From assembly GCA_965655095.1 (NCBI GenBank), contig OZ296656.1, positions 39,928,001-39,992,000 on the forward strand: DNA of 64,000 nucleotides, written 5' to 3'. This DNA comes from Haplodiscus bocki. Its lineage: Eukaryota. The notes below the pieces were generated by a model. It was not told the DNA's origin and did not search any database. It saw only the letters and a list, made by a program, of their open reading frames with translations. This document shows, one piece after another, positions 1-64,000 of the stretch. Both the position numbers and the translations under genes were made by a program. Within the stretch, counting starts at the first letter, position 1; the number at the start of each line of letters is the position of its first letter.

Positions 1-3000
1 AGCCATGCCAAAGACCATGCATAGGAAACCCTGCGAAAAATGTAACGCAAAAAACCTCTGCAAAAAAGAGCAAGGGAAAAATCCCTGCGAAAGAGCTCAT
101 GGAACTCTCTGCTGAAAAAGAGTGCAGGATAAAAGGGTCCCACGAAAGAGCGTGCCGAAAAACTTTTGGGATATAGGGCGTGGGAAAAAAGGCCTTGCTC
201 AAAAGCGCACCTCAAAAACCCCTGCGGTAGGGCAGCCGCAAAATGGTTCTGCGAAGAAGCGCACGGGGAACAGCCCTAATAAATGCGAACGGAATAAACC
301 ACGCCAAAAGAGCGAACGCAAGAAGCCACTGCAAAGAATCGCAAGGAAAAAGTTCCTGAGGAAGAGCCCATGGATGCCTCCGTTGCGAAAGAGTGACCGG
401 GGAAACAGTCTGCCGAGAGATAGCACGGAAAAAACTCCCGCAAAATAACCTTTGGAATCGTCCATGCGAAACAGTTCTCAGAAGATGTCCCCAAGGAGGA
501 ACCCATGGTAAATGCACTGCCAAAGGCCATGCAGACGATGCCCTGCAAAAGATGTTACGCAAAAAATCAACTTCAAAAAACAACCAGGATAAAACACCTG
601 CGGGATAGGTCATCGAAATCTCCGCTACAAAAGAGTGCAAAATAAAAGGGCTCCAGGACAGAGCGTACCAAAAAAACCCCAGCGAAAGTGCCCAAGGAAG
701 TCTCCCTCGCGAAAAAGTCCACGGAGAAGGCCCCGAAAAAAATGCACCGAAAAATTTTCCGCGAGAGACCGCACTAAAAACGACCCTGCGAAATTGTCCA
801 TGGAAACCGTCCATGCAAAAGAATGCACGGGAAAAGCCCCCGGGAAAAGGCTCAAGGGAAAATCTCTGTGAAAGAGCGTGCCGAAAAAGATTCCTGAAAC
901 AGGGCTCGGAAAAGGACCCCCGTACAAAAACGCACGGTAAGAATCCCTGCGAAAGAGAGCACGGAAAATAGTTCTGCACAAAAAAGCATGAAAAGGAATT
1001 TGCAAAGTAGCGCTAGAAGAAAATCTCTGCGAAAAAGCGCACGCAAAAAGACATTGCAAGGAAGCGAACCGAAAACGCTCCTGGGATTAGCTCATGGACA
1101 TCTCCGCTGCGAATAAGTGCGCGGAGAAACAGCCCCGCGAAAGAGAGCACGAAAAAAGCCCCCACAGAAAAACCAATGGATATCGTTCATGCGAAAGGGT
1201 TCACGGAATTTGTCTCCAGGAAAGAGCCCATTGTAAAAACCCTGCCAAAGACCACGCAGTCGAAGCCCTGCAAAAGATGTTACGCAAAATGCCTCTGCAG
1301 AAAACACCCAGGAAAAAACCCCTGCGGGAGAGCTCATGGACGTCTTTGCTACAAAAGAGTGCAAAATAAAAAGCTCCAGGACAGAGCGTACCAAAAGCCC
1401 CAACGAAAGTGCCCAAGGAAATCTCCCTCGCGGAAAATTCCACGGAGAAGGCCCCGGAAGAAAAGTGCACAAAAAACTCTGCGACAAAGCAAACTGAAAA
1501 CCGCCATGCGAAAGAGTCCATGGTAACCGTCCATGCGAAAGTGTTCACGGAAGATATCCCCGAGAAAGAGGCTACTTAAAATCCCTTCGAAAGTGAATGC
1601 AGAAGAAACCCTGCGAAAGAAGGCATGAAAATTGACTACGCAAAGGAGTGCACGGAAGATGTCCCTTGGAAAGAAACCACAGGAACAGCCGCGGAAAAAG
1701 CATTGCGAAAAAGGCCAAGCAAAACAACCCCGCAAAAGCGCTCGCAGAAACAACCACTGCGAAAAAAGCGCCGCGAAACAATCCATGGAAATCGTCCATA
1801 AGGAGGAGTTCACGGAAACAGTCTCCAAGAAAGAGCCCGTGGTAAAAGCCATGCCAAAGACCATGCATAGGAAACCCTGCGAAAAATGTAACGCAAAAAA
1901 CCTCTGCAAAAAAGAGCAAGGGAAAAACCCCTGCGAAAGAGCTCATGGAACTCTCTGCTGAAAAAGAGTGCAAGATAAAAGGGTCCCACGAAAGAGCGTA
2001 CCAAAAAAGCCCCAGCGATGGAGCCCATAAAAACCGTCCATGCGAAAAGATGCACGCAGGACGCCTCAGAAAAAAATTCACCAAAAAATTTCCCGCGAGA
2101 GAGTGCACAGAAAACTATCCTGCAAAGAAACCATGGAAACCTTCCGTTCGAAAGTTTTTACGGAGGTTGCACCCGGAAAAAAAACCCTTTGGAAAAACCC
2201 TGCGAATGAGCGTGCCGAAAAACTTTTGAGATATAGGGCGCGGGAAAAAAGGCCTTGCTCAAAAGCGCACCTCAAGAACCCCTGCGGTAGGGCAACCGCA
2301 AAATGGTTCTGCGAAGAAGCGCACGGAGAACAGCCCTAAAAAATGCACCCGGAAAGAACCCTGCCGAAAGAGCGCACGAAGAAGCCATTGCAAAGAAGCG
2401 CACGACAATGCTCCTGAGGATGCTCCCATGGATGCCTCCGTTGCGAAAGAGTGCCCGGGAAAGCAGCACGGAAAAAACCCGCACAAAAAAACCAATGGGA
2501 ATCGTCCATGCAAAAAACTTCACGGAAAATGTTTCCAAGAAAGAGCCCATGGTAAAAGTTCTGCCGGAGACCATGCAGACGAAACCCTGCGAAGGATGTT
2601 ACGCAAAGAAGCCCCGGCGAAAAACAGCCCGGATAAAACTTCTGCGGGAGTGCTCATGGAAGTCTCCGCTACAAAAGAAAGCACAATATAAGGGCTCCAC
2701 GACAGAGCGTACTAAAAGGGCCCCAGCAAAAGTGCCCAAGGAGTTCTCCCTCGCAAAAAACTCCACGGAGAAGGCCCGGAAAAAAGTGCACCAAATAAAA
2801 TTCCGCGAGCGACCGCACTTGAAACGAACCTGCGAAAAACTCCATGGAAACCGTCCTTGCAAAAGAACGCGCGGGAGAAGCCCCCGGGAAAAGGCTCAAG
2901 GTAACATCTCCGTGGAAGATCGTGTCGATAAGGAGTCCTAAAAGAGGGCTTGAGAGTAAACCCCCGTACAAAAGCGCACGGCAATAAACCCTGCGAAAGA

Positions 3001-3250
3001 GAGCGGGGAAAATGGTACTGCACAAAATTGCACGAAAAAAAGCTTTGCAAAAAAGTGCTAGGAATAATTCTCTGCGAAAAGGCGCACGCAAAAAGACATT
3101 GCAAGGAAGCGAACCAAAAGCGCTCCTGGGATCAACTCATGGACATCTCCGCTGTAAAAAAGTGCCCGGGGAAATAGCCCCGCGAAAGAGAGCACGGAAA
3201 AAGCCCCGCGAAAGTTTTGCCTGGAAATTGTCCATTCAAGAGAGTGCTCG
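1..3250 (+). repeat. ~2.05-kb tandem duplication; the first copy lacks 214 bp
   Basis: Bases 1-150 are near-identical to 1847-1996 (offset 1846). GAGCGTGCCGAAAAACTTTTG at 148 matches 2208 (offset 2060). Downstream, ~640-1150 resembles ~2680-3200 at lower identity. Boundaries are approximate. Confidence 0.75.
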
Positions 3251-6200
3251 GAAAATGCTCCTGCGAAAAAGCGCACGAATTAGGGCCCTGTGGTTCAGCT
3301 CACGGAAATATCCGCTGCCAAGGAGTGTGCGAAAGAACAAAACTGCAAAAGCAGCACAGAAAAAGCCCCTGCGGAAGAGAGCACGCAAAAATACGCTGGA
3401 AAAGGCACAAGGAAAGGCCCCTGCTATTAAGCCCATAGAAATCTCCTCTGCGGAAGAGTGAACGGAGAAATTCCCGGAAGAAAGTGAACCAAAAATCGTC
3501 GAACAAAAGAGCGAAATCAAAAAGACTTTGCGGAAGAGTCGACGGAAGTCGTCCAATCAAAAGAGTGCACGGAAGATGCACCCGCGGAAACGCCCACGAG
3601 AAAAGCCTTGCGAAAGTGCCTACCAAAAAATCCCCCGCGAAGAAGCCCATGAAAGTCTCCCCTGCGAAAAGTGCAGGGAGAAGCCCCCAAAAAAATGCAC
3701 CAAAAACTCTTCCGCGAGAGAGCGCACTAAAATCGACCCTGCAAAAAAGTTCATGGAAACTGTCCTTGCGAAAGAATGCACGGGGTATGCCCACGTCAAA
3801 AGCTCAAGGGAAAAACCCTGCGAAAGAGCGTGCCGAAATTGTTTCCTGAAAGAGGGCTCGGAACTAGACCCCTGCACAAAGCGCGCGGCAAGAACCCCTG
3901 CGAAAGAGTGCACCGAAAATGGTTCTGCAGAAAAGCGCACGAAAAAAGCTTTGCAGAAAAGCGCTCGGAAAAAATCTCTGCAAAAAAGCGCACGCAAAAA
4001 GACATTGCAAGAAAGCGAACCGAAAACGTTACTGAGGAAGAGATCATGGACATCGCCAGGGCAAAGAATTGCACGGGAAAGCAGCCCAACGAAGGAAAAC
4101 ATGGAAAAAGCACCGGCGAAGAATCCCACCAAAATTGTCCATCCAAAAGAGTTCACGGAAGACGTGCCGGAAAATATTCTACGGTAAAAGCCTTGCCAAA
4201 GACCATGCAGAAGAAAAACTGCGATAGAGGGCACGGAAAGAAGCCCCTGCAAAAAAACGCACGGAAAAAAGGCCTCACAAAAAAAGCTCGTGGAACTCTC
4301 CCCTGCAAAAAATTGCAGAATGAAAGGGCCCCGTGAAAGAGTCCATCGAAATCTCCCCTGCGAAAAAATGTACCGAGAAGGCTTCGAGAAAAATTGCACC
4401 GAAATGTTTCCCGCGGGAGAGCAATCTGAAAATGACCGTGCGAAAGACTCCATGGAAACCGTCCATGCTAAAATGTGCAAAGAAGATGCACCCGTGAAAG
4501 ATCCCACGGAAAAGCCTTGCGAAAGCGCGTGCGGAAAAAGCCTCGCAAAAGAGGACGCGGTTAAAAGCCCCTGTACAAATGCGAACGGCAGAAACCCCGG
4601 CGATAGGGCACACACAAAATGTTTCTGCGGAAAAGCGCACGGAGAGGAGCACTAAAAAAGCGCATGCAAAAACCCCTGGAAAAGAGCGCACGCAAAAATC
4701 CACTGAAAGAAAGCGCACGGAAAAAGCCCTCACAAAAGAGCTCGTGAAACTCTACCGTGAAATAGCGGAGATTAAAATGACACCGCTAAAGAGAGTACTG
4801 GAAAAGCCCCCGCAAAAGAGCCCATGGAAACCAACAATGCGAAAAGATGCACGGAAGAGGCCCGGGAAAAGAATGCGCCAAAAAGTTTCCCTCGTGGGAG
4901 CGCACTGAAAACGACCCCGCGAAAGAGTCTATCGAAGCCGTCCTTGCGAAGGCTTGCACGGAAGAGGCGCTCGGGAAATAACCCATGGGAAAGGCCCATC
5001 GAAAATCGTGCCGAAAAAGTTTCGGGGAAAAGGGCGCGGAAATAAAACCCTGCACAAAACCGCAACGCAAAAACCCCTGCGGTAAGGCTCCCGAAAAATG
5101 GTTGCGCGAAGGAGCGCACGGAGAAGAGCCCTAAAAAACGCGCACTGAAAAAACCCCGCTGAAAGAGCGCACGCAAAAGTCAATGCAAAGAATCGCAAGG
5201 AAAAAGCTCCTGGGGATGAGCCAATGGATGCCTCCGTTGCGAAAGAGTGCCCGGGGAAACAGCCTCGCGAGAGATAGCACGGAAAAAGCTCCCGCAAAAA
5301 AGCCCCTTGGAAGTCGTCCATGCGAAGCAGTTCACGGCGGAAGATGTCACCAAGAAAGAGCCCACGGGATTTTCTCTGCAAAAAAGCGCACAGAAGAAGC
5401 CACTGCGTAAAAAAGGCACGGAACCAGCCCCCCCTGAAAAAGTGCTTGAAAATAACCACTGTGGAGAAGCGCTGGGAAAAAGCCATACCGAAAAAACCCA
5501 TGGAAATTTTCCATGCGAAAAAGTTCACGTAAGATATCCCCGAGAGGGAGCCCACTTAAAATCCTTGCGAAAGTGCATGCAGAAGAAACCCTGCGAAAGA
5601 GGACATAGAAAAAAGCCCCTGCAAAAAAGCGCACGGAAAAAGCTCCCACTAAAGAGCTCATGAAACTCTCCACCGTGAAAGAGTGCACGATAGAAATACC
5701 CCACAAAAAGCACATGGAAAAGCCACTTGTGAAAAAGCGAAAGACAAAAGTTCTTGCAAAATAGCGCAGCTAATTTGTTGCTCCGAAAAAACGCACGAGA
5801 AAGCCGCCACTGGAAACATCCCTGCAAAAAAATGCACGGAAGAGGCCCCTGAGAAAGAGCTCACGGTAAAAACCTCGCGATAGTTAATCCAGAAGACCTG
5901 GGAACGAAAGAGTACGTGGAAAAAAGGTCCTGCGAAAGAGTGCACGCAAAAAATCACTGCAAATAAGCGGACGGAAAAGGCGCCCGGGGATAAGTCCAGG
6001 AAAAGCTGCGCTGCAAAAGAAGGTTTGAGAAAAAAGCCCGCGAAAGAGTCCATGGAAATCGTCCACGCGAAAGTGTCCAAGGAATGTGCCCCCGTAAAAA
6101 ATCCTACGAAAGCGCGTGTGGAAAATGCACAGCAAAAGAGAACACGGCAAAGACTCCTGCAAAAGGGAGCAAGGAAATATCAACTGCTAAAAAAGACACG

Positions 6201-9200
6201 GAAAAGCCCCTGCGAATAAACCCATGGAAATTTCCCCTGCGAAAGAGGGCATGGTGAAGACACGGATTAAAAAAGCACCGAAAAATCTCCCGCAATATAG
6301 CGCACCGAAATCGACCCCGCGAAACGGTGCACGGTAAGAAAGCCCGGATAAGGGCGAATTGAAAAAACCACTCCGATAAAACGCACGGAAGAAGCCGGGC
6401 AATGAGCCACTGAAGATCGTCTATGCGAAAAAAGTGCACGCGGAAAAAAGCCCACGGAAAAATCCTGCGAAAAAGCGTGCGGCAAAAACCGCTGAGATAG
6501 AACGCACGTAAAAAATCTTCTGCGGAAAGGCGCACGGAAGGAGTCCCTGCAAAAAAGCGCACGGGAAAAGCCCCTGCGAAAGAGCACAGGCACAAAGCCA
6601 TTTCAGAGAAGCGAAGCGAAAGTGCTCTTGGGGATGAGCTCATTGACATCACCGCTGCAAAAGAGTGCCGCGGGAGACAACCCCGCGAAAGAGAGCACTG
6701 AAAAAGCCCCAGCGAAGAAGCCCACGGAAGAGGACATTTGAGAAAGTGCACGGAAGAAGCTCTAACAAAAGGGCTCGCGTAAAAAATTCCCGCGAAGGAG
6801 CACACGGAAAAGACCCCTGCAAAAGAGTGCACGAAAGATTCGGAAAGAAAGCAGCGCAGAAAAAAACTACTATGAAAGAGCGCAAAAAAAGCCCCTGCGA
6901 ATGATCGCACCGACAAAGTCCCCTTCAAGAAGTCCACGGAAAAAGCACTGGTGGTAGAGCGCACAACACAATCTTTCACAAGAAGCGCAGGTGAAAAAAA
7001 GCTGCTGCAAAACAGCACACGAAAACCCCGTCCCGGCAAAAAAAAGACCACAGAATAAGCACCTGTGAACGAACGCACAGAAAAGCCCTTACAAAGAGCA
7101 CAGGGGAAAAGTTGCTGCAAAAAATCGCACGGAAAACCACTGCGGAAAAGTGAAAGGAAAAAGCCACCGCTAGTGAGCGCACTGAGGAAGGCGCTATGGA
7201 AGGGCAGACTGAAAAAACGCCAGAGAAAGAACGCACCGAATAATCCTCCGCGAAAGAGCGCACTGTACTTAATCGTGCGAAAGTGTGCGCCAAAAAGATT
7301 TTCCTTGACCGAGCGCACCGAATAAGCCACTGCAATAAAACGGCACAGAGAAGTAGCGCACCAAAAATTCCCCCCAAGAGTGCGCACTGAAAACGACCCT
7401 GGGGAAGAGTCCATGCAGCTCGTCCATGCGAAAGAGCTCACGGAAGAAGCCCCCAGGAAAAACCCACGGGAAAAGCCTTGCGAAAAAGCTCGTGGAGAAA
7501 ATACTTGTGAAAAGTGCACGAAAAAAATCTTACATAAGAGCGCAAGTAAAAAACGTCTGCGGAAGAGTGCGCATGCAAAAAGCCGTTCTGAAACAGCGCA
7601 AGAAAGAGCCCCTGCTAAAAAGTGCATGGAAATCTATGCTGCAAGAGTGTGCGCGGGATAAAAGCCCTGAGAAAGAGAGCACGGAGAATGGCCTGCGAAC
7701 TATCCCATGGAAGTCTCCCCTGCCAAAGAGAGCACGGAAGAAACCACTGCAAAGGAGCGCACGGAAAATGCTCCCGGGGCTGATCCCATGAATATCTCTG
7801 CTGCAAAAAAGTGCACGAGAAAACAGACCCGCAAAAATTACACGGGAAATGCACATTTAGAAAAGTGCACAAAAAAGATCTTACAAAAGAGCGCAGGGAA
7901 CGTTTACCCGCAAAAGAGGGCACGGAAAAGCCCCATGATAAAACCCAGGGAAAAAGACTTTGTGGTAGAGCGTACGAAAAGGTCTTTTGCAAGAGGGCGC
8001 ATCCAAAAGACCCACGCAAAAGAGCGCACCGAAAACTCCTCCGCAAAAAAGACCACAGAAAAAGCATCTGTGAATGAACAGTCGAAAAAAAGCCTTAAAA
8101 GGAGCGCAGGTGAAAAACTGCTTCAAAAGAAGCCCAGGGGAAATCTCTGCGGAAGAATGGACGGAAAAAGACGCCGTTAGCGAGCGCAGTGAAGAATGTG
8201 GTACGAAAGAGAGCACTGAAAAGACCACCGAGAGAGAGAGCGCACCAAAAAACCTCTGGCGAGAAAGCGCACTGAAATTAATCTTGCAAAGGAGTGCACG
8301 GCACGAAATCCCGCGAACAAGCGCAAAGAGGAAACCTTTTAGAACAGTGGGCGCGGAACCAACCCCCGCGAAAGAGTGCTCGCAAAAAACCGCTCCGAAC
8401 AAGCGCACAGGAAGGAGCCCCTGCAAATAAGCGCACGAATGACGTCCCAGCGAAATAGCGCACCGGAAAAAGCCGCCTTCAAAAAACCCACGGAAAAGCA
8501 CTGGTAGTAGAGCGCACAAACAAATTGTTTTACAAAAAGCGCAGGGGTAAAACTGCCGCAAAAGAGAGAACGGAAAAACCTTTGCAGAAGAGCGCACAAA
8601 AAAATGCCTTTCTGAAAATTTGCGAGGAAAAAATCCAATAGAAAAAAATTATGGAGTCAGCTTCGCCATATCAACGCACGAAGGAGGCCCTGCAAGAAAG
8701 CGAACGAAAAACGCCCAAGCGAAAGTTGCCATAAAAGTTGTCCCCGCAAAACGGTGCACGGAAAAAAACCTCGCATAACCGAGCATGGAAATAGCCCCCG
8801 CGAAAAAACCCACGAGAAAAGCACATGTGAACAAGTGCACGAATAGAATAAAGTCTTTACAAAGGGGCGAAGGTAAAAAGTTCCCGCGAAAGAACGAACA
8901 AAAAAACCCTTGCGAAGAGCGCACGAAGCAAGCGCCTGCGAAGGAATCGATGGACACTGTCCATGCAAAAGAGTACACGGAAGACGCTACCGCAAAAAAG
9001 TGCACAATGAAAAACCCGCGGAGGAGCGCATGGAAAAAACCACTTCAAAAAAACGCACGGAAGAAGCCCGCGAAAAACACATGGAAACCGTTCATGCGAA
9101 AAGGTGCACGGAAACTGCCCCCGTGAAAAAGCTCACGGGAAAGTCCTGCGAAAGAGCGTGAGGAAAAAGCTTTTTGAGAGAGGGCGCGGAAAAAAACCCG

Positions 9201-9849
9201 ATCACAAAAGCGCACGGTAGAAACCGCTGAGATGGAGCGCACGTAAGAGAGCTTCTGCGGAGAAGCGCACGCTAGGAGCCACTGCAAAGAAGCCCATGAA
9301 AAAAGTCCCAGCGAAAGAGCGCACCAAAAAAGCCGCCTTGACAGAAACCACGGAAAAGCACTGGTAGTAGAGCGCACAAACAAAATTTTTCACAAAAAGC
9401 TCAACTGAAAAACCCACTGGAAATAAATAAACCGAAAGCCCCCCCTGCAAAAGAGACCACAAAAAAGCACCTGTGAATGACTGCACAAAAAAACCTCTAC
9501 AAAGGAGCGCAGGTATGAAACTCCTGCCAAAAAGGGCGCAGAAAAAACCACTGTGAAAAAGCTAACCAAAATTTTTTCTAAAAAGCTTACAGAAAAAATC
9601 AGCGCAAACGACCGCTCAGAAAAATTCACTGCGAAAAAAAACACGGAAGAAACCGCTGCGATGCAGTGCTTGCAAAAAACCACTGCGAACGAACGCGCGA
9701 AAAAAGCCCCGCGAAAGAGTCCATGGAAATCGTCCTTGTCAATGAGTTCACGTAAGATGTCCCCGGGAGAGAGCCCACGGTGAAAGCCCTGCAGATGTGC
9801 ATGCAGAAAAAGCCCGGTGATGGAGCGCAAGGAAAAACCCCTGCGAAAG

Positions 9850-11110
9850 AGAGCACCGAAAAGGCTCCCTTGACAAAACCCACGTAAATAGCACTGGTGG
9901 TGAAGCGATCAAAAAAATCTTTTACAACAGCGCAGGTTAAAACCTACTGCAAAAGAGGGCACTGAAAACATCTGCGGAAGAGTGGACGGGAAAAGCCATT
10001 GCTAGCGAGCGCACTGAAAAGGGCGCAACGAAAAGGTGCTTTGAAAACACCCCAAGAAAAAGTGCACCGAAAAATCCCCTGCGAGGGAGCGCACTGAAAT
10101 TAATCCTTCGAAAGAGTGCAATGAAGAAATTCCCGCGAACGACGGCGCAGAAGAAGCCATTGCGAAAAAAAACAAGGAACAAGGCGCTGTGAATGAGTGC
10201 TTGCAAAAAACCACTGCAAAACAAACGCTAGGAAAAAAGGCCCCGCGAAAAAGCTCAAGGAAATCGTCCATGCGAAAGTGTTCATGTAAGATGTCCCAGA
10301 CAGAGCCCATGGTAAAACCACTGCGAGAGTGCATGCAGAAAAAGCCCTGCGAAAGAAGCCATCGGAAAAAGTACCGAGAAGGAGTTCATGGAAATCGTCC
10401 ATGCGGAAGACTCCGAGTATGCTGTCCCCGGGAGGAAGAGCGCAAAGAAAAAAGCCCCGCTATGAAACCCATGGAACTCATCCATGCGAAAGAGTTCATG
10501 TAAGATGTAAGATGTCCCCGGCAGAGTGCCCACTGTAAAAGCCCTGTGAAAGTACATGCATAAGAAGCCCTGTGAGAGAGCGCAAGAAAAAAGCCCCTGC
10601 GGAAGAACGCACCGAAAAGGCTCCTGTGACAAAACCCACGGAAGTAGCACTGGTGGTAGAGTGCACAAAAAATCATTTAAAACAAACAAACAAACGCAGG
10701 TGAAAACCTGCTGCAAAAGAGGGCACCGAAAACTTCTGCGGAAGAGTAGACGGCAAAAGCCACTGGTAGCGAAAGCACTGAAAAAGGCGCTATGAAAAAG
10801 TGGACTGAAGAAACCCCAGAGAAAGAGCACACCGCAAAACCCCCTGCGAGAGAGCGCACTGAAATTAATCCTGTGAAACAGTGCATAGAAACGAATCCCC
10901 GCGAACGACAGCGCAGAAGAAGCCATTGCGAAATAAAACAAGGAAAAGGCCGCTGCGAAGGGGTGCTTGCAAAAAGCCACTGCAAAAAAACGCTAGGAAA
11001 AGGCCCCGCAAAAAAACTATGGAAATCGTCCATGTGAGAGAAATCACGCAAGATGTCTCCTCGAGGGAGCCCGAAGTAAAAGCCCTGCGAAAGTGCATGC
11101 AGAAGAACAC
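9850..11110 (+). repeat. Diverged ~756-bp tandem duplication
   Basis: GCACCGAAAAGGCTCC...ACAAAACCCACG...TAGCACTGGTGGT occurs at 9853 and 10609, with collinear similarity downstream (e.g. GCGCACTGAAATTAATCCT and GCGCAGAAGAAGCCATTGCG in both copies). Confidence 0.7.
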
Positions 11111-17400: not shown

Positions 17401-18630
17401 TGACAAAAAAGCCACGCACAGAAGCCCTCGGAAGAAGCACTTGTGAAAGAGCGCACGACATAGCCTCTTAGAAAAGAGCGCAGCTAACCAGCGGCTCCAA
17501 AAAAGCGCACGGAAAAACCTCTGCCGAAACCGCACGGAAAAAAGCCCCGCAAAGGAATGCAAGGGGAAAATCGAAGACAGAAACCACCTAAACGTCCCCC
17601 GTGAGAGAGCGCAATGAAACCACATCTGGAAAGGAGAGCACGGAAATGCCACCGGTAAAGAGCCCACGGTATAAGCTTTGCGAAAGTTAATGCAGAAGAA
17701 GCCCTGTGAACGAAAGAGAACGTGGAGAAAAGGTCCTGCAAAAAAGTTCATGCAAAATTTCACTGAAAATAAGCGCACGGAAAAAGCTCCTGGGATAGGC
17801 CCATGAATAACTGGGCTGCGAAAACAGGCATGGAAAAAAGCGCCGCGAGGGAGTCTATGGAAATCGTCCATGCGAAGGAGTGCACGGAAAACAAGCCCCG
17901 GGAGAGAATGAACAGAAAAACGCCTGTGAAAAAGCGCAGGAAAGGGACCTTCAGAAAAGGGCGCAGAGAAAACCACTTTGAAACATCACACCAAAATTTC
18001 TTTTCGAAAATTCCCGTAGAAAAGACACCTGTAAGATAGGTCACGAAAAAAACCCAGACAAAGCAGTGTTGGTAAAAAGTTGCTGCAATTGAGCCAACGG
18101 AAAATCTCCACGATAAAATGTACACAAGAAAAACACCTGTGGAACAGCGCACGAAAAAAACACTTATAATAGAACGCAGATAAAAAGCCCAGAAAAAGCA
18201 GCTCAGGTGAAAAGCCGCTCCAAAGGAGCGCACGGAAAAGTCTTTGCGAAAGACTACGCGGGCCAAGCCACTGCTAAGGGGCGCACTCAAAAAGCTCCTA
18301 TCAAAGACCGCACCGAGAAAGCCCCCGCAAAAAGCGCACTGAAATTAATTCTGAAAAAAAACACGGAAAAACTCCCAGAGAGGGAGCGCACAGAAAAAGC
18401 CACTTCAAAAGAAGGAACGGAACAAGCCGTCGTGAAAGGGTCCTCGAAAAAAGGCCCTGCGAATAAGCGCACGAAGAAAGCCCCGGAGACAAAGCCTATG
18501 GAAATCGTCCATGCGAAACAGTTCCCGAAAGATGTCCCCGGGCAAAAGCCCACGGTAAAAGCGCTGCGAAAGTGCATGCAGAAGAAGCCCTGCGAGGAAG
18601 GGCAAGAAAAATTGCCCCGCGAAAGAGTCC
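13610..18630 (+). repeat. ~1.72-kb HOR, ~3 tandem copies
   Basis: The marker GCCTCTTAGAAAA occurs at ~14032, 15745 and 17463. Near-identical ORF translations are offset by 1717-1718 (15216/16934, 15258/16976, 15383/17101, 14649/16366). Confidence 0.9.
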
Positions 18631-52500: not shown

Positions 52501-53650
52501 GAAAAGGCTCCCGGGGATAATCCCATGAATATCTGCGCTGCGAAAAAGGGCATAGAAAAAAGCCCCGCGAGGGAGTCCATGGCAATCGTCCAAGCAAAGG
52601 AGAGTACGTGAAATAAGCACCCCGAAAGAATGAACGGAAAAACACCGGTGCAAGAGCGCAGGAAGAAAAACCAGACAAAGCAGTACGAGTAAAAACTTGC
52701 CGCAAAGGAGCCCACGGAAAAGCTTATTCGACAGACTACATGGACAAAGCCACTGCTAAAGAGTGCACTAAAAAAGCCCCTACCACTTGCGCACGGAAAA
52801 ATTCCACGCTAAAAAACCCGCCGAAAAGCTCCTGTGAAACAGCGCACGAAGAAATCTTTACTTAAGAATGCAGGTAAAAAACTGCTGCGAAAGAGCGAAT
52901 GGAAAATCCTTTCTGGAAGAGCGTACGGAAAAAATACCCTCAGAAATAGCGCAAGCAAAAGACCAGTAAAAAAGTGCAAAGAATCTGCCCCGCCGATGGA
53001 CCGGATATTTTCCTGAAGGAAAATGATCAGGCGAAAGCTGCCATGAAAGTTGCCCCTGCAAATCACTGCACGGATAAAAAGCCCGGCAAAAACAAGCATG
53101 GAAAAAGGCACCGATAGAAACCCACGGGAAAACAAATGTGAAAAAATGCACAAAAAAGCCCTTACAAAAAGGCGCAGGTAGAAAGTACCTGCAAAAGAGC
53201 GCAAGGATAAAACACCTGGGATAGAGCATACGAGAAAAGCCCAGACAAAGCAGCGCAGGTAAAAAGATGCTGCCAAAGAGCGCACGGAAAATCTTTTGCC
53301 AAAGATTTTACGGATAAAGCTACTGCTGAAGCGCTCACATGAAAAGCTCAATTCAATGAGCGCCCGCAAAAATTCAACGCTGAAAAGCCCATAAAAAAGC
53401 ACCGGTGAAACGGCGCACCGAAAAGTTTTTACAAAAAAGCGCGGATAAAGATCTCGTACGAAAGAGCGCAACAAAAAAACCCTTCAAAAAAACCCGCGGA
53501 AATAGCATTTGTGGTAGAGCGCACAGAAAAATTTTTACAAAAGGGAGCATGCAAAGAACCAATGCGAAAGAGCGCAGCGAAAAAGCCCCCGAGAAAGAGA
53601 CCACATAAAAAGCATCTGTGAGAGAACGCTCAGAAAAACCATTACATAGA
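46600..53650 (+). repeat. Diverged, interrupted members of the 1.46-kb HOR family mixed with cassettes of the other HOR families
   Basis: Family markers (GATTTTACGGATAAAGCTACTGCTGAAGC at ~47987 and ~53303; GTTACATAAGAGGGCAGTT at 51594; GCGCATGGAGTCAGCCCCAACGAA at ~47189 and ~52055) occur at irregular spacing. Confidence 0.75.
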
Positions 53651-55179: not shown

Positions 55180-58100
55180 AGCTTACGGAAAAAAAACCTG
55201 TGAAAGAGTTCACGAAATAAAACCCACAAAAGAGCGCAGTTAAAAAGCTGCAACGGAATAGCGCACGGAGAAGCGTCTGCAAAAAACCGCATGGAGTCAG
55301 CCTCAACGAAAGAGAGAACAAAGAAAGGCCAGGCAAGAAAAGGGGCGGAAAAGGCTCGAGCGAAAGTTGCCATAAAAGTTGCCCCTGCAAATCAGTGCAC
55401 GGAAAAAAAACCAGCAAAAGCAAGCATGGAAAAAGGCTCCAAGGGAAACCCAAAGGAAAGCAAATGTGAAAAAATGCACGAAAAAACTCTTACAAAAAGG
55501 CGCAGGTAGAAAGTTCCTGTGAAAGAGCGCACGGATAAAACACCTCGGATAGAGCGTACGAGAAAAGCCTAGACAAAGTAGTGCAGGTAAAAAGATGCTA
55601 CCAAAGAGCACACGGAAAATCTTTGCCAAAGATTTTACGGATAAAGCTACTGCTGAAGCGCTCACTTGAAAAGCTCCATTCAATGAGCGCCCGCAAACAT
55701 TCCACGCTAAAAAGCCTATAAAAAAGCACCGGTGAAACGGCGCACCGAAAAGTTCTTACAAAAAAGCGCGGACTAAGATCTCCTACGAAAGAGCGCAACA
55801 AAAAAACCTCTTCGAAAAAACCCGCGGAAATACCGTTTGTGGTAGAGCGCACAAAAAATGATTTACAAAAGGGAGCATGCAAGGAACCAACGCGAAAGAG
55901 CGCAACCAAAAAAACCCCCAAAATAGAGACCACAGAAAAAGCATCTGTGAAAGAACGGACAAAAAAGCCCAGACAACGCTTTGTCGGTAAAATTTTGCTG
56001 CAAAAGAGCGCACGGAAAAGATTTTTCAAAAGACTACATGGACAAAGCGACTGCTAATGAGTGCACTCAAGAAGCCCCTACTAATTGCGCAAGGAAAAAT
56101 TCCACGCTAAAAAGCCCATCGAAAAGCACCTGTAAAACAGCGCACTAAGAAAACTCCTACAAAAGAGCGCAGGTAAAAATTTCCAACGAAAAGGGCGCAA
56201 AAAATCCCCAGTTGAAGTGCACACCAATTGAATTTCGCGGAAAAAGGTCACGGAAAAAACACTTGTGGAAAAACGTACGAAAAAACGTTACATAAGAGGG
56301 CAGTTAAAAAACTGCTGCCAAAGAGCGCTCGTAGAAGTGTCTGTAAAAAAGCGCATGGAATCAGGCCCGACGAATGAACGCACAAAAGAGACTTTGCAAG
56401 ATAACGGGCGTAAAAGACTCAAGCGAAAGTTGCCAAGAAAATCGCTCCTTGAAATCAGTGCACAGAAAGAAAGCCCTTCAAAAGCGAGCATGGAAATAGT
56501 CACCGCGAAAAAGCCACAGGAAAAACACACGCGAAAAAATGTGCAGCAGAAGGCTTTACAAAAAACGCAGTAAAATCTTGTGCCAAAAACGGCGCAGAAG
56601 AAGCCCCTGTGAAAGAGCACACCAAAAAAGTTCTGCGAAAAAACTCACGGAAAAAACCTGTGAAAGAGCTCACGAAATAAATCCTACAAAAGAGATCAGT
56701 TAAAAAACTGCAGCGAAATATGCACGGAGAAGCGTCTGCAGAGAAACGCATGGAGTCAGCCCCAACGAAAGAGAGCACAAAGAAGGCCCTACATGAAAAG
56801 GGTCGGGAAAAGCACAAGCGAAAGCTGCCATGAAAGTTGCGCCTGCAAATCACTGCACGGATAAAAAGCCCGGCAAAAACAAGCATGGAAAAGGCACCGA
56901 TAGAAACCCACGGGAAAACAAATGTGAAAAAATGCACAAAAAAGCCCTTACAAAAAAGCGCAGGTAGAAAGTTCCTGCAAAAGAGCGCAAGGATAAAACA
57001 CCTGGGATAGAGCATACGAGAAAAGCCCAAACAAAGCAGCGCAGGTAAAAAGATGCTACCAAAGAGCGCACGGAAAATCTTTTGCCAAAGATTTTACGGA
57101 TAAAGCTACTGCTGAAGCGCTCACTTGAAAAGCTCAATTCAATGAGCGCCCGCAAAGATTCCACGCTAAAAAGCACATAAAAAAGCAACTGTAAAACAGC
57201 GAACTAAGAAAACCCCTACAAAAGAGCGCAGGTAAAAATGTCCAACGAAAAGGGCGCAAAAAATCCCCAGTTGAAGTGCACACCAATTGAATTTCGCGGA
57301 AAAGCTCACGGAAAAAACACTTGTGGAGAAGCGTACGAAAAAAACGTTACATAAGAGGGCAGTTAAAAAACTGCTGCCAAAGAGCGCTCGTAGAAGTGTC
57401 TGTAAAAAACCGCATGGAATCAGGCCCGACGAATGAACGCACAAAGGAGACTTTGCAAGAAAACGGGCGTAAAAGACTCAAGCGAAGGTTGCCAAGAAAA
57501 TCGCTCCTGGAAATCAGTGCACAAGAAAAAAGCCCTTCAAAAGCAAACATGGAAATAGCCACCGCGAAAGAGCCACAGGAAAAGCACAAGCGAAAAAATG
57601 TGCAGCAAAAGCCTCTACAAAAAATGCAGTAAAAACTCGTGCCAAAAATGGCGCAGAAGAAGCCCTGTGAAAGAGCACACCAAAACTTCTGCGAAAAAAC
57701 TCACGGAAAAAACCTAAGAAAGAGCTCACGAAATAAATCCTACAAAAAAAATCAGTTAAAAAACTGCAGCGAAATAGCGCACGGAGGAGCGTCTGCAAAA
57801 AAGTGCATGGAGTCAGCCCCAACGAAAGAGAGCACAAAGAAGGCCTTGCAAGGAAAGGGGCGGAAAAAGCACAAGCGAAAGCTGCCATGAAAGTTGCCCC
57901 TGCAAATCACTGCACGGATAAAAAGCCCGGCAAAAACAAGCATGGAAAAAGGCACCGATAGAAACCCACGGGAAAACAAATGTGAAAAAATGCACAAAAA
58001 AGCCCTTACAAAAAGGCGCAGGTAGAAAGTTCCTGCGAACGAGCGCAAGGATAAAACACCTGGGATAGAGCGTACAAGAAAAGCCCAGACAAAGCAGCGC

Positions 58101-61100
58101 AGGTAAAAAAATGCTACCAAAGAGCGCATGGAAAATCTTTTGCCAAAGATTTTACGGATAAAGCTACTGCTGAAGCGCTCACATGAAAAGCTCATTTCAA
58201 TGAGCGCCCGAAAAAATTCCACGCCAAAAAACCCATAAAAAAGCTACGGTGAAACGGCGCACCGAAAAATTCTTACAAAAAAGCGCGGATGAAGATCTCC
58301 TACGAAAAAGCGCAACAAAAAAACCTCTTCGAAAAAACCCGCGGAAATACTGTTTGTGGTAGAGCGCACAAAAAATGTTTTACAAAAGGGAGCATGCAAG
58401 GAACCAACGCGAAAGAGCGCAAGCAAAAAAACCCCCAAAATAGAGACCACAGAAAAAGCATCTGTGAAAGAACGGACAAAAAAGCCCAGAGAACGCTGTG
58501 TCGGTAAAATTACGCTGCAAAAGAGCGCACGGAAAAGGTTTTTCAAAAGACTACATGGACAAAGCGACTGCTAATGAGTGCACTCAAAAAGCCCCTACTA
58601 ATTGCGCACGGAAGAATTCCACGCTAAAAAGCCCATCGAAAAGCACCTGTAAAACAGCGCACTAAGAAAACCCTACAAAAGAGCGCAGGTAAAAATGTCC
58701 AAAGAAAGGGGCGCAAAAAATCCGCAGTTGAAGTGCATACCAATAGAGTTTCGCGAAAAAGCTCACGGAAAAATTACTTGTGGAAACGCTTACGAAAAAA
58801 ACGTTACATAAGAGGGCAGTTAAAAAACTGCTGCCAAAGAGCGCTCGTAGAAGTGTCTGTAAAAAACCGCATGGAATCAGGCCCGACGAATGAACGCACA
58901 AAGGAGACCTTGCAAGAAAACGGGCGTAAAAGACTCAAGCGAAGGTTGCCAAGAAAATCGCTCCTGGAAATCAGTGCACAGGAAAAAAGCCCTTCAAAAG
59001 CAAACATGGAAATAGCCACCGCGAAAGAGCCACAGGAAAAGCACAAGCGAAAAAATGTGCAGCAAAAGCCTCTACAAAAAATGCAGTAAAAACTCGTGCT
59101 AAAAATGGCGCAGAAGAAGCCCCTGTGAAAGAGCACACGAAAACTTCTGCGAAAAAACTCACGGAAAAAAACTGTGAAAGAGCTCACGAAATAAATCCTA
59201 CGAAAGAGACCAGTTAAAAAACTGCAGCGAAATAGCGCACGGAGAAGCGCCTGCAAAAAAGTGCATGGAGTCAGCCCCAACGAAAGAGATCACAAAGAAG
59301 GCCCTGCAAGGAAAGGGGCGGAAAAAGCACAAGCGAAAGCTGCCATGAGAGTTGCCCCTGCAAATCACTGCACGGATAAAAAGCCCGGCAAAAACAAGCA
59401 TGGAAAAAGGCACCGATAGAAACCCACGGGAAAACAAATGTGAAAAAATGCACAAAAAAGCCCTTACGAAAAGGCGCAGGTAGAAAGTTCCTGCGAAAGA
59501 GCGCAAGGATAAGACACCTGGGATAGAGCGTACAAGAAAAGCCCAGACAAAGAAGCGCAGGTAAAAAAATGCTACCAAAGAGCGCATGGAAATTCTTTTG
59601 GCAAAGATTTTACAGATAAAGCTACTGCTGAAGCGCTCACATGAAAAGCTCATTTCAATGAGCGCCCGCAAAAATTCCACGCCAAAAAACCCATAAAAAT
59701 GCACCGGTGAAACGGCGCACCGAAAAATTCTTACAAAAAAGCGCGGATAAAGATCTCCTACGAAAAAGCGCAACAAAAAAACCTCTTCGAAAAAACCCGC
59801 GGAAATACCGTTTGTGGTAGAGCGCAAAAAAAATGTTTTACAAACGGGAGCATGCAAGGAACCAACGCGAAAGAGCGCAACCAAAAAAACCCCCAAAATA
59901 GAGACCACAGAAAAAGCATCTGTGAAAGAACGGACAAAAAAGCCCAGAGAACGCTGTGTCGGTAAAATTACGCTGCAAAAGAGCGCACGGAAAAGGTTTT
60001 TCAAAAGACTACATGGACAAAGCGACTGCTAATGAGTGCACTCAAGAAGCCCCTATTAATTGCGCAAGGAAAAATTCCACGCTAAAAAGCCCATCGAAAA
60101 GCACCTGTAAAACAGCGCACTAAGAAAACTCCTACAAAAGAGCGCAGGTAAAAATTTCCAACGAAAAGGGCGCAAAAAATCCCCAGTTGAAGTGCACACC
60201 AATTGAATTTCGCGGAAAAGGTCACGGAAAAAACACTTGTGGAAAAACGTACGAAAAAACGTTACATAAGAGGGCAGTTAAAAAACTGCTGCCAAAGAGC
60301 GCTCGTAGAAGTGTCTGTAAAAAAACGCATGGAATCAGGCCCGACAAATGAATAGACAAAGGAGACCTTGCAAGAAAACGGGCGTAAAAGACTCAAGCGA
60401 AGGTTGCAAAGAAAGTCGCTCCTGGAAATCAGTGCACAGAAAAAAAGCCCTTCAAAAGCGAGCATGGAAATAGCCACCGCGAAAAAGCCACAGGAAAAGC
60501 ACACGCGACAAAACGTGCAGCAAAAGCCTTTACAAAAAACGCAGTAAAAACTCGTGCCATAAATGACGCAGAAGAAGCCCCTGTGAAAGAGCACACCAAA
60601 TTTTCTGCGAAAAAACCCAAGGAAAAAACCTGTGAAAGAGCTCACGAAATAAATCCTACAAAAGAAATCAGTTAAAGAACTGCAGCGAAATAGCGCACGG
60701 AGAAGCGTCTGCAAAAAAGCGCATGGAGTCAGCCCCAACAAAAGAGAGCACAAAGAAGGCCCTGCAAGAAAAGGGTCAGAAAAAGCACAAGCGAAAGCTG
60801 CCATGAAAGTTGCCCCTGCAAATCACTGCACGGATAAAAAGCCCGGCAAAAACAAGCATGGAAAAAGGCACCGATAGAAACCCACGGGAAAACAAATGTG
60901 AAAAAATGCACAAAAAAGCCCTTACAAAAAAGCGCAGGTAGAAAGTTCCTGCAAAAGACCGCAAGGATAAAACACCTGGGATAGAGCATACGAGAAAAGC
61001 CCAAACAAAGCAGCGCAGGTAAAAAGATGCTACCAAAGAGCGTACCGAAAATATTTTGCCAAAGACTTTACGGATAAAGCTACTGCTGAAGCGCTCACTT

Positions 61101-64000
61101 GAAAAGCTCAATTCAATGAGCGCCCGCAAAAATTCCATGCTAAAAAGCCCATAAAAAAGCACCGATGAAACGGCGCACCGAAAAGTTCTTACAAAGAAGC
61201 GCGGATAAAGATCTCCTACGAAAGAGCGCAACAAAAAGCCTCTTCGAAAAAACCCGCGGAAATAGCATTTTGTGGTAGAGCGCACAAAAAACTTTTTACA
61301 AAAGGGAGCATGCAAGGAACCAACGCGAAAGAGCGCAACCAAAAAAACCCCCAAAATAGAGACCACAGAAAAAGCATCTGTGAAGGAACGGACAAAAAAG
61401 CCCAGACAACGTTTTGTCGGTAAAATTTCGCTGCAAAAGAGCGCATGGAAAAGGTTTTTCAAAAGACTACATGGACAAAGCGACTGCTAATGAGTGCACT
61501 CAAAAAGCCCCTACTAATTGCGCACGGAAGAATTCCACGCTAAAAAGCCCATCGAAAAGCACCTGTAAAACAGCGCACTAAGAAAACCCTACAAAAGAGC
61601 GCAGGTAAAAATGTCCAGAGAAAGGGGCGCAAAAAATCCGCAGTTGAAGTGCATACCAATAGAGTTTCGCGAAAAAGCTCACGGAAAAATTACTTGTGGA
61701 AACGCTTATGAAAAAAACGTTACATAAGAGGGCAGTTAAAAAACTGCTGCCAAAGAGCGCTCGTAGAAGTGTCTGTAAAAAACGCATGGAATCAGGCCCG
61801 ACAAATGAACGCACAAAGGAGACCTTGCAAGAAAACGGGCGTAAAAGACTCAAGCGAAGGTTGCAAAGAAAATCGCTCCTGGAAATCAGTGCACAGAAAA
61901 AAAGCCCTTCAAAAGCGAGCATGGAAATAGCCACCGCGAAAAAGCCACAGGAAAAGCACAAGCGAAAAAATGTGCAGCTAAACCCTCTACAAAAAATGCA
62001 GTAAAAACTCATGCCAAAAATGGCGCAGAAGAAGCCCTGTGAAAGAGCACATCAAAATTTCTGCGAAAAAACCCAAGGAAAAAGCCAGTGAAAGAGCTCA
62101 CGAAATAAATCCTACAAAAGAAATCAGTTAGAAAACTGCAGCGAAATAGCGCACGGAGAAGCGTCTGCAAAAAAGCGCATGGAGTCAGCCCCAACGAAGG
62201 AGAGCACAAAGAAGGCCCTGCAAGAAAAGGGGCGGAAAAAGCACAAGCGAAAGCTGCCATGAAAGTTGCGCCTGCAAATCACTGCACGGATAAAAAGCCC
62301 GGCAAAAACAAGCATGGAAAAGGCACCGATAGAAACCCACGGGAAAACAAATGTGAAAAAATGCAGAAAAAAGCCCTTACAAAAAGGCGCAGGTAGAAAG
62401 TTCCTGCGAAAGAGCGCAAGGATAAAACACCTGGGATGGAGCGTACGAGAAAAGCCCAGACAAAGCAGCGCAGTTAAAAAAATGCTATCAAAGAGCGCAC
62501 GGAAAGTCTTTTGCCAAAGATTTTACGGATAAAGCTACTGCTGAAGCCCTCACTTGAAGAGCTCAATTCAATGAGCGCCCGCAAACATTCCACGCTAAAA
62601 AGCCCATAAAAAAGCACCGGTAAAATGGCGCACCGAAAAATTCTTACAGAAAAGCGCGGATAAAGATCTCCTACGAAAGAGCGCAACAAAAAAACCTCTT
62701 CAAAAAAATCCGCGGAAATAGCATTTGTGGTAGAGCGCACAAAAAACTTTTTACAAAAAGGAGCATGCTAAGAACCAACGCAAAAGAGCGCAACCAAAAA
62801 AACCCCCAAAATAGAGACTACAGAAAAAGCATCTGTGAAAGAACGCACAAAAAAGCTCAGACAATGCTGTGTCGGTAAATTTATGCTGCAAAAGAGCGCA
62901 CGGATAAGGTTCTTCAAAAGACTACATGGACAAAGCGACTGCTAATGAGTGCACTCAAAAAGCCCCTACTAATTGCGCACGGAAGAATTCCACGCAGAAA
63001 AGCGCATCAAAAAGCACGTGTAAAACAGCGCACTAAGAAAACCCCACTAAGAAAGAGCGCAGGTAAAAATGTCCAACGAAAAGGGCGCAAAAAATCCCCA
63101 GTTGAAGTGCACACCAATAGAATTTCGCGAAAAAGCTCACGGAAAAAACACTTGTGGAAAAGCGTACGAAAAAAAACGTTACATAAGAGGGCAGTTAAAA
63201 AACTGCTGCCAAAGAGCGCTCGTAGAAGTGTCTGTAAAAAAACGCATGGAATCAGGCCCGACAAATGAACGCACAAAGGAGACCTTGCAAGAAAACGGGC
63301 GTAAAAGTCTCAAGCGAAGGTTGCAAAGAAAATCGCTCCAGGAAATCAGTGCACAGAAAAAAGCCCTTCAAAAGCGAGCATGGAAATAGCCACCGCGAAA
63401 AAGCCACAAGAAAAGCACAAGCGAAAAAATGTGCAGCAAATGCCTCTACAAAAAATGCAGTAAAAACTCGTGCCAAAAATGGCGCAGAAGAAGCCCTGTG
63501 AAAGAGCACATCAAAATTTCTGCGAAAAAAACCAAGGAAAAAGGGAAAAAGCCAGTGAAAGAGCTCACGAAATAAATCCTACAAAAGAAATCAGTTAGAA
63601 AACTGCAGCGAAATAGCGCACGGAGAAGCGTCTGCAAAAAAGCGCATGGAGTCAGCCCCAACGAAAGAGAGCACAAAGAAGGCCCTCCAAGAAAAATGGT
63701 GGAAGAAGCACAAGCGAAAGCTGCCATGAAAGTTGCCCCTGCAAATCACTGCACGGATAAAAAGCCCGGCAAAAACAAGCATTGAAAAAGGCACCGATAG
63801 AAACCCACGCGAAAACAAATGTGAAAAAATGCACAAAAAAGCCCTTACAAAAAGGCGCAGGTAGAAAGTTCCTGCGAAAGAGTGCACTGAAGAAAGACCT
63901 GGGATAGAGCGTATGAGAAAAGCCCAGACAAAGCAGTGCAGGTAAAAAGATGCTACCAAAGAGCGCATGGGAAATCTTTTGCCAAAGATTTTACGGATAA
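55180..64000 (+). repeat. 1,458-bp HOR, ~6 tandem copies (one shortened by ~400 bp), running off the window end
   Basis: GTTACATAAGAGGGCAGTTAAAAAACTGCTGCCAAAGAGCGCTCGTAGAAGTGTCTG occurs at 56287, 57346, 58803, 60261, 61719 and 63178 (spacings 1059, 1457, 1458, 1458, 1459). Confidence 0.93.

What the first reader, a model, noticed from the sequence alone, without database searches (positions are those of the whole stretch)
1..64000. Gene-free array of at least 64 kb with nested periodicity (13-14 bp > 26-27 bp > ~133 bp > 0.7-2 kb > ~4 kb): candidate uncharacterised centromeric or subtelomeric satellite
Seen: every level of periodicity listed, no unique sequence and no inversion. Established: nested monomer-to-HOR organisation is typical of eukaryotic centromeric satellites (e.g. 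primate alpha satellite; mouse major satellite built from short sub-repeats) and of complex telomere-associated arrays (e.g. Chironomus). Inference: this is structural chromosomal DNA. Several different kb-scale HORs derived from such a short monomer within 64 kb is unusual, and I do not recognise the family. If the contig proved prokaryotic, viral or organellar it would be far more exceptional.
Basis: partly seen in the sequence, partly recalled or inferred. Interest (0 to 1): 0.7.

Follow-up and report, generated by a model that had tools for sequence, protein, structure and literature searches.

The report
Large layered 27-bp-based satellite array
The window is the older edge of a real, gene-free block of about 230-250 kb of tandem DNA built from a 27-base unit, sitting mid-chromosome in a 1.5-Gb animal genome; it is a previously undescribed satellite of an ordinary kind, and nothing tested marks it as a centromere or chromosome end.

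Summary
All 64 kb is one-way, non-coding tandem DNA. The base unit is 27 bp (a 13-mer plus a 14-mer), with about 2,370 copies, each about 72% identical to the consensus. Local repeats of 0.7-4 kb sit on top. The 133-bp level is only local.

The window is G000:C9:39,928,001-39,992,000 on a 92.8-Mb contig. The array runs from about 39.75-39.775 Mb to 40,006,925, roughly 230-250 kb. It has a young core (39.776-39.905 Mb; 1.79-kb units, 98-100% identical), and the window lies in the older right flank.

The kb-scale units occur at this locus only. The 27-bp family occurs at more than 15 other loci on at least eight contigs, including an array of at least 70 kb on C5.

A subtelomeric position is refuted: the array lies at 43% of the contig, and I found no telomere repeats. 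A centromeric role could not be tested and has no positive support: no CENP-B box, no hairpin excess, several arrays per contig, and an ankyrin-repeat exon about 19 kb away.

Most likely this is an ordinary complex satellite shaped by unequal exchange, similar in build to ruminant satellite I.

No paper held the consensus. Earlier notes of this scan describe other single-locus layered satellites in this genome. My look-ups turned up no note on this family.

The read-mapping tool, the encoding-contig tool and further genome fetching were closed.

The parts
1..64000 (+). One-way satellite array, A-rich strand on +. It holds about 2,373 monomers of 27 bp with consensus CCCTGCGAAAGAG+CGCACGGAAAAAGC. 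Monomer lengths are 27 (44%), 26 (28%), 28 (13%) and 25 (7%). The window is the older right flank of an array of about 230-250 kb, C9:~39.75/39.775-40,006,925.
3001..13000 (+). Old, unhomogenised stretch. The best non-self copy of any 1-kb tile is 64-78% identical or absent. It contains one weak 764-bp x1.9 duplication at 9752-11158.
13607..18766 (+). 1718-bp repeat, 3.0 copies, 91% matches.
19001..28000 (+). Two to three copies of a repeat of about 3.8-3.96 kb (spacings 3825, 3957-3959), 96-99% identical.
22199..22708 (+). Local 133-bp repeat, 3.9 copies, 75% matches. Its twin at 26023-26532 is the same part of the next 3.8-kb copy.
26023..26532 (+). Second copy of the local 133-bp x3.9 block.
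31189..45528 (+). 1967-bp repeat, 7.3 copies, 93% matches. It is paired into 3943-3951-bp super-units that are up to 99.8% identical.
45529..53000 (+). Older stretch. Nearest copies are mostly 74-82% identical, rising to about 87-92% in the last 2 kb.
56095..64000 (+). 1059-bp (x2.8) and 1458-bp (x4.7, 94%) repeats. GC falls to 0.44 here.

Best explanation
This is an ordinary, non-coding, locus-specific complex satellite.

Proposed history:
1. A 13-14-bp motif doubled into a 27-bp unit and grew into a long one-way array.
2. Its monomers drifted to about 72% identity with the family consensus.
3. Unequal exchange between misaligned repeats then re-copied kb-sized pieces of this already old array, repeatedly and most recently in the centre.

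This gives a young core of 1.79-kb units (super-unit 1792+1792+1115 = 4699 bp, copies 98-100% identical). The older flanks, to which the window belongs, carry patches of different 0.7-4-kb repeats and stretches never re-copied.

Shown: the anatomy, the extent, the single-locus nature of the kb units, the dispersal of the 27-bp family, and unit-length changes in quanta of the short repeat.

Inferred: the unequal-exchange mechanism, and that the block is a neutral or heterochromatic structural element with no sequence-specific function.
For: - Periodicity and consensus fit hold over 174.6 kb.
- Extent: satellite signature in all bins from 39,828,001 to 40,002,565 and at 39.775 and 39.80 Mb, absent at 39.75 Mb and beyond 40.007 Mb. 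The last 90 bp lie after a young LTR insertion.
- Layering: dot matrix, 20-mer spacings and nearest-copy identities.
- A core-specific 26-mer has 67 hits (<=1 mismatch), all on C9:39,776,285-39,904,305 and all on the + strand.
- A 510-bp window query finds nothing above 69% identity off C9.
- Of 14 distinct large indel lengths between successive core units, 12 lie within 0.2 of a multiple of 13.43 bp (binomial p about 6e-4). That is what out-of-register pairing of the short repeats predicts.
- GC is 0.59 in the consensus, 0.49 in the core and 0.44 at the right end, against 0.35-0.40 in the flanks. That fits decay with age.
- Non-coding: only 44% of monomers are 27 bp long, so no frame holds. 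No Pfam, Rfam or tRNA hit.
Against: - Function was not tested in any way. No reads, chromatin, methylation or expression data could be reached.
- The array is large, mid-chromosome and layered, so a centromere role is not excluded.
- The inventory of the 27-bp family is partial. Only near-consensus copies could be listed in full. Old diverged arrays elsewhere are seen only through rare consensus-like words.
- The indels counted are not all independent events.
Confidence: 0.7

Rival explanations
1. The array is the centromere, or centromere core, of chromosome C9. On this reading the 27-bp family is the species' centromeric satellite with chromosome-specific higher-order units, as with primate alpha satellite.
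For: - Size is about 230-250 kb, at 43% of a 92.8-Mb contig.
- The build is layered, with a young homogeneous core and older flanks.
- The kb units are private to C9 while the short unit is shared with other contigs.
- Only one transposon insertion was seen in about 179 kb read.
Against: - Near-consensus arrays lie at 15 loci on only eight contigs. C1, C2, C4 and C5 each have several, and none lies on C3, C8, C10, C11 or the unplaced contigs.
- C9 has a second locus at 58.70 Mb.
- The next-largest arrays seen are at C5:115.8 Mb and C2:16.3 Mb, so position shows no common pattern.
- There is no CENP-B box and no excess of single-strand folding (z -0.18 and +1.64).
- Unique sequence starts directly at the array's end, and an ankyrin-repeat exon lies about 19 kb away.
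- Earlier notes of this scan list several other large single-locus satellites in this genome, so size alone does not single this one out.
Confidence: 0.17
2. The 27-bp repeat is the internal minisatellite of a mobile element that scattered it over the genome. The C9 array is then an old, runaway expansion of one such copy. This concerns origin and is compatible with the best explanation.
For: - Short arrays of about 1-3 kb hold perfect 43-54-mers of the same consensus on eight contigs, which suggests recent spread.
- Earlier notes of this scan report that Helitron/Helentron-type elements with internal tandem repeats are common in this genome and have seeded other satellites. I did not check this here.
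Against: - The 455 bp directly right of the C9 array are unique in the genome.
- The next repeat, a dispersed element of about 420 bp, does not lie beside any of the known 27-bp loci.
Confidence: 0.3
3. It is a subtelomeric or telomere-associated repeat.
Against: - The array is interior, at 39.9 of 92.8 Mb.
- No TTAGGG or TTAGG runs occur in the window or in about 240 kb of neighbouring DNA.
- Ordinary DNA lies on both sides.
Confidence: 0.02
4. It is an assembly artefact, or the coding repeat of a giant protein gene.
For: - Several kb of the core are 100% identical at 4699-bp spacing, where copy number could be mis-assembled.
- The window has more long open frames than shuffles: 172 against 42-69 of at least 120 aa.
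Against: - A graded mosaic of 64-100% identical copies over about 240 kb is not what collapse or duplication errors produce.
- The excess of open frames follows from a consensus that has no stop codon in any of its six frames.
- 56% of monomers are not 27 bp long, so no reading frame persists.
- No Pfam match reaches its cut-off.
Confidence: 0.03

Closest known systems
Ruminant satellite I and, from my own knowledge, the bovine 1.706/1.711/1.715 'patchwork' satellites: kb-sized units built from 23-bp or 31-bp subrepeats
   Same: In both, a short subrepeat (here 27 bp, itself 13+14) is still traceable throughout, while the units that are actually homogenised are 0.7-4 kb long. Cervid and bovid satI monomers of 0.8-1.4 kb are thought to have arisen from a 31-bp subrepeat (PMC7288315).
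   Different: - No sequence relation is expected, and none was tested.
- Ruminant satI is centromeric on most chromosomes with one dominant unit length. Here the kb units are private to one locus, vary from block to block, and the short-unit family is also scattered in small arrays.
- The strong A>T strand asymmetry is peculiar to this family.
Primate alpha satellite with chromosome-specific higher-order repeats and layered centromeres
   Same: A shared short unit carries locus-specific higher-order units. A young homogeneous core is flanked by older, diverged layers, all in one orientation within the array.
   Different: - The monomer is 27 bp, not about 171 bp, so it is not nucleosome-sized.
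- There is no CENP-B box.
- The family is not confined to one site per chromosome.
- No centromere evidence exists.
Satellite families with both long arrays and short dispersed euchromatic arrays, such as Drosophila 1.688 and Tribolium TCAST (own knowledge), or the tandem-repeat-bearing MITEs of bivalves (title listed, PMC3879986, not read)
   Same: The same repeat occurs in a few very long arrays and in many arrays of 1-3 kb across chromosomes.
   Different: A link of the short arrays to a mobile element could not be tested here.

Membership tests
Complex satellite DNA (kb-scale units built from short subrepeats) | Head-to-tail tandem copies in one orientation over a long stretch | tested here: met
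   No minus-strand HSP in 174.6 kb. The array is about 230-250 kb long.
Complex satellite DNA (kb-scale units built from short subrepeats) | The short subrepeat is detectable throughout and beyond chance | tested here: met
   72-73% identity and 4.6% indels to the 27-mer consensus in every bin. Shuffles give 63-64% and 16%. Autocorrelation is 0.436 at lag 27 against 0.287 expected.
Complex satellite DNA (kb-scale units built from short subrepeats) | Long units resemble each other far more than their internal subrepeats do | tested here: met
   kb units are 90-100% identical, while monomers are about 72% identical to the consensus.
Complex satellite DNA (kb-scale units built from short subrepeats) | Non-coding | tested here: met
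   No Rfam, tRNA or Pfam match. Monomer lengths do not keep a reading frame.
Centromeric satellite | Bound by CENP-A/CENH3 and located at the primary constriction | not testable with these tools
   No chromatin or cytological data are available.
Centromeric satellite | One principal array per chromosome, with the family shared by all or most chromosomes | tested here: inconclusive
   Near-consensus arrays lie at 15 loci on 8 contigs, with several on each of C1, C2, C4 and C5 and none on many contigs. Old diverged arrays cannot be listed in full.
Centromeric satellite | CENP-B box, or dyad symmetry / non-B DNA potential. These are frequent in centromeric satellites but not obligatory. | tested here: not met
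   0 CENP-B box matches. DNA folding z-scores are -0.18 and +1.64 against shuffles.
Subtelomeric / telomere-associated repeat | Position at a chromosome end, next to telomere repeats | tested here: not met
   The array lies at 39.9 of 92.8 Mb. No telomere-like runs occur in the DNA held.
Transposon-borne minisatellite expanded into a satellite | Arrays at different loci are flanked by the same element termini | tested here: inconclusive
   The right flank of the C9 array is unique for 455 bp. The left flank and the small loci could not be read.

The most novel reading that the evidence does not exclude
The array is the functional centromere of this chromosome, in an animal that earlier notes of this scan take for a coral (not verified here). 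The strand-asymmetric 27-bp family would then be the species' centromere-competent repeat, with private kb-scale higher-order units on each chromosome that carries a large array. I know of no sequence-defined centromere in a coral.
Probability: 0.15. Interest if true: 0.6.

Novelty: new member of a known kind. Interest (0 to 1): 0.27.

Why it matters
As it stands, this adds one well-delimited satellite family to the repeat catalogue of a 1.5-Gb animal genome. I found no description of the family, but its build is a known kind. It is a clear example of an old short-unit array being rebuilt from the centre outwards in kb-sized pieces, with unit lengths changing in steps of the 13.4-bp repeat.

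It would matter more if chromatin data placed the centromere here. The private 1.79-kb unit (C9:39.776-39.905 Mb) would then be a ready FISH and ChIP target. The contrast with the near-consensus array on C5 would allow a test of how centromere repeats turn over.

Tried and rejected
- Literature: six 16-mers of the consensus, both strands, occur in no paper. A search on coral satellites and centromeres gave nothing relevant.
- Other collections: the consensus 20-mer in JGI metagenome contigs gave three hits, all single chance matches in unrelated, non-repetitive contigs.
The best relatives are unnamed ENA proteins. I therefore say only 'animal'. 'Probably coral' rests on earlier notes and was not checked.
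- Genome-wide abundance: the degenerate pattern GCRAAR x3 was not specific. It also picks up a different TGCAAAGAA-type satellite, so I did not use it.
- Hairpin or dyad-symmetry idea (TGCG-AAAGAG-CGCA): rejected by the folding z-scores.
- CENP-B box: none.
- CpG decay as an age marker: CpG observed/expected is about 1.0 everywhere, so it carries no signal.
- Coding repeat: rejected.
As a result, the left edge, the small loci and the C5 and C2 arrays were seen only as coordinates. I did not try to read them by another route.
Full report
**Where the window lies.** The window is G000:C9:39,928,001-39,992,000, + strand. The assembly has 1.50 Gb in 6,626 contigs, and C9 is 92.81 Mb long. It is therefore a eukaryotic chromosome-scale scaffold, and the window sits at 43% of its length. 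Earlier notes of this scan call the organism an animal, probably a stony coral. I could not confirm that.

**Checking the observation: composition and short periods.**
- The window is A 39.6%, T 12.8%, G 24.2%, C 23.4%. GC is 0.44-0.50, and AT skew is about +0.5 in every 2-kb bin.
- Self-identity peaks at lags 13/14 (0.385/0.390), 27 (0.436), 54 (0.393) and 80/81. Composition alone predicts 0.287. Odd multiples of 13.4 score below even ones, so the unit is a 27-bp dimer of a 13-mer and a 14-mer.
- Anchored counts give the consensus CCCTGCGAAAGAG + CGCACGGAAAAAGC.
- I aligned 174.6 kb of the array to this cyclic consensus by wrap-around alignment. Every 6-kb bin gives 72-73% identity with 4.6% indels. 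Composition shuffles give 63-64% with 16% indels, and flanking DNA gives 53%. All 27 positions have a clear majority base (0.54-0.89).
- The window holds about 2,373 monomers: 44% are 27 bp, 28% are 26, 13% are 28 and 7% are 25.

**Checking the observation: kb levels.** TRF with long periods and 20-mer spacings confirm the following:

| Period (bp) | Copies | Matches | Window position |
|---|---|---|---|
| 764 | 1.9 | 80% | 9752-11158 |
| 1718 | 3.0 | 91% | 13607-18766 |
| about 3825 and 3957-3959 | 2-3 | 96-99% | 19-28 kb |
| 705/713 | not measured | not measured | about 28-30 kb |
| 1967 (paired into 3943-3951) | 7.3 | 93% | 31189-45528 |
| 1059 | 2.8 | 81-92% | from 56095 |
| 1458 | 4.7 | 94% | 57158 to the window's end |

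- The 133-bp level is only local. It occurs as two blocks of 3.9 copies at 75% identity, and these are the same part of successive 3.8-kb copies. There is no distinct window-wide peak at 133.
- There is no inversion: six shared reverse-complement 14-mers and no minus-strand HSP.
- No foreign insert lies in the window. All 128 bins of 500 bp keep AT skew of at least 0.41 and 68-76% identity to the consensus.

**Checking the observation: gene content.**
- No Rfam family and no tRNA were found. None of the ten long ORFs tested, of the 136 mechanical ORFs of at least 120 aa, reaches a Pfam cut-off.
- The window has more long open frames than shuffles: 172 against 42-69.
- This follows from a consensus with no stop codon in any of its six frames. 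Most monomers are not multiples of three, so no frame persists.

**Extent and anatomy of the whole array.**
- I read 100 kb to the left, 100 kb to the right and twenty 2-kb samples further left.
- The satellite signature is present in every bin from 39,828,001 to 40,002,565 and at 39.80 and 39.775 Mb. It is absent at 39.75 Mb and beyond.
- At 40,002,561-40,006,836 a 4.28-kb Ty3/gypsy element is inserted. It has gag-protease and RT-RNaseH-integrase domains. Its 171-bp LTRs are 99% identical, and the target duplication is AAACC.
- About 90 bp of satellite follow the insertion, so the array ends at 40,006,925.
- The array is therefore about 228-251 kb of satellite. I saw one transposon insertion in the roughly 179 kb I read.

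**Layering.** A dot matrix, 20-mer spacings and nearest-copy BLAST identities of 1-kb tiles show a layered structure.
- The core is young. It consists of 1.79-kb units and shortened derivatives (1766, 1553, 1336, 1291, 1115 bp). These include a super-unit of 1792+1792+1115 = 4699 bp whose copies are 99.9-100% identical.
- The right flank, which is the window, is a mosaic. Some stretches have no copy above 78% identity (window 3-13 kb). Window 45-53 kb is also older, mostly 74-82%. The other blocks are re-copied two to seven times at 90-99.8%.
- GC falls from 0.59 in the consensus to 0.49 in the core and 0.44 at the right end. The flanking DNA has 0.35-0.40, which fits decay with age.
- CpG observed/expected is about 1.0 throughout and carries no age signal.

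**Mechanism.**
- I aligned successive core units, delimited by a diagnostic 26-mer. They are 89.5-99.9% identical.
- They differ by large indels of 26, 93, 136, about 200, 213, about 242, 289, 443, about 456, 472, 616, 674, 940 and about 1566 bp.
- Twelve of these 14 lengths lie within 0.2 of a multiple of 13.43 bp (binomial p about 6e-4). That is what out-of-register pairing of the short repeats during unequal exchange or slippage would produce.
- The core units are as far from the 27-mer consensus as the flanks. The kb-scale amplification therefore acted on an already old array.
- These steps are inferred from the pattern, not observed.

**Distribution in the genome: the kb units.**
- The kb units are private to this locus. 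A core-specific 26-mer (up to one mismatch) has 67 hits. All lie on C9:39,776,285-39,904,305 and all on the + strand. None lies on unplaced contigs.
- A 510-bp piece of the window finds nothing above 69% identity off C9.

**Distribution in the genome: the 27-bp family.**
- The consensus 20-mer (up to one mismatch) has 2,861 hits genome-wide, against 0 for the control. Only 20 of them fall in the 174.6 kb of the C9 array that I held.
- The exact 43-mer has 95 hits, listed in full:

| Contig | Positions (Mb) |
|---|---|
| C1 | 84.29, 155.47 |
| C2 | 36.54-36.55, 82.87 |
| C4 | 62.556, 85.54, 103.64, 107.56 |
| C5 | 105.13, 110.645, 115.80-115.87 |
| C6 | 2.16 |
| C7 | 21.21 |
| C9 | 58.70 |
| C12 | 21.116 |

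- The C5 stretch at 115.80-115.87 Mb spans at least 70 kb. Most of the other loci span only 1-3 kb.
- Rare consensus words also mark diverged arrays at C2:16.33-16.39 Mb and C1:86.90-86.92 Mb.
- Overall there are a few large arrays and many small ones. Several contigs carry more than one, and many carry no clean copy at all.

**Interpretation.**
- Subtelomeric is refuted by position and by the absence of telomere-like runs.
- Centromeric cannot be tested without chromatin or cytological data.
  - In its favour are the size, the mid-chromosome position, the layering and the private kb units.
  - Against it are the multi-locus distribution, the lack of a CENP-B box and the lack of excess single-strand folding (z -0.18 and +1.64).
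  - Also against it are the unique sequence directly at the array's end and an ankyrin-repeat exon about 19 kb away. In addition, earlier notes describe other large single-locus satellites in this genome.
- A transposon origin of the family is plausible because near-perfect short arrays are scattered widely. The one flank I could test is unique, and the other flanks could not be read.

**Comparison with known satellites.**
- The build matches complex satellites whose kb units derive from short subrepeats. An example is ruminant satellite I, with 0.8-1.4-kb monomers from a 31-bp subrepeat (PMC7288315). From my own knowledge, the bovine 'patchwork' satellites built on 23-bp units are similar.
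- It also resembles the layered organisation of primate alpha satellite, but with a 27-bp monomer and no centromere evidence.
- No paper holds the consensus words, and a metagenome scan gave only chance hits.
- I file it as a new member of a known kind.

**Limits.**
I did not try to get those letters another way.
- The left edge is known only to within 23 kb. The other arrays are known only by coordinates, and the inventory of diverged arrays is incomplete.

Noticed in passing
L020:561-4836 (C9:40,002,561-40,006,836; 10.6-14.8 kb beyond the window's right end): A young 4.28-kb Ty3/gypsy LTR retrotransposon sits inside the last ~90 bp of the array. Its 171-bp LTRs are 99% identical, the target duplication is AAACC, and it has gag-protease and RT-RNaseH-integrase frames. 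Its Pol is 99% identical to a 130-member protein cluster, so the family is recently active.
   Followed up: yes
L020:5380-5800 (C9:~40,007,380-40,007,800): A dispersed repeat of about 420 bp, SINE- or MITE-like, with 838 first-look candidates genome-wide at 76-86% identity. The 455 bp between it and the array's end are unique.
   Followed up: partly
G000:C5:115,803,315-115,873,343: A second large array of the same 27-bp family, at least 70 kb long and much closer to the consensus than the C9 array, with many perfect 43-54-mers. It is known only by coordinates.
   Followed up: partly
G000:C1:9,617,161-9,637,021 (- strand): A different A-rich satellite built on a TGCAAAGAA-like 9-bp motif, at least 20 kb long. 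It turned up with a degenerate pattern. Any relation to the 27-bp family is unknown.
   Followed up: no
G000:C2:16,330,848-16,389,491 and C1:86,903,192-86,916,403: Sparse consensus-like 27-mer words spread over 58 kb and 13 kb. They suggest further old, diverged arrays of the family.
   Followed up: no
L024 (C9:40,044,001-40,046,000): A run of 200 N, an assembly gap, about 37-39 kb to the right of the array's end.
   Followed up: no
L022:3584-4036 (C9:~40,025,600): An open frame with ankyrin repeats (Pfam E 1e-10), about 19 kb from the array's end. There is also a weak DEG/ENaC channel hint at L028:6811-7233. Genes therefore lie close to the array.
   Followed up: partly
window, all six frames: The 27-mer consensus has no stop codon in any frame. 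The satellite therefore yields far more long mechanical ORFs than shuffled sequence (172 against 42-69 of at least 120 aa; longest 509 aa). This is a trap for gene callers.
   Followed up: yes
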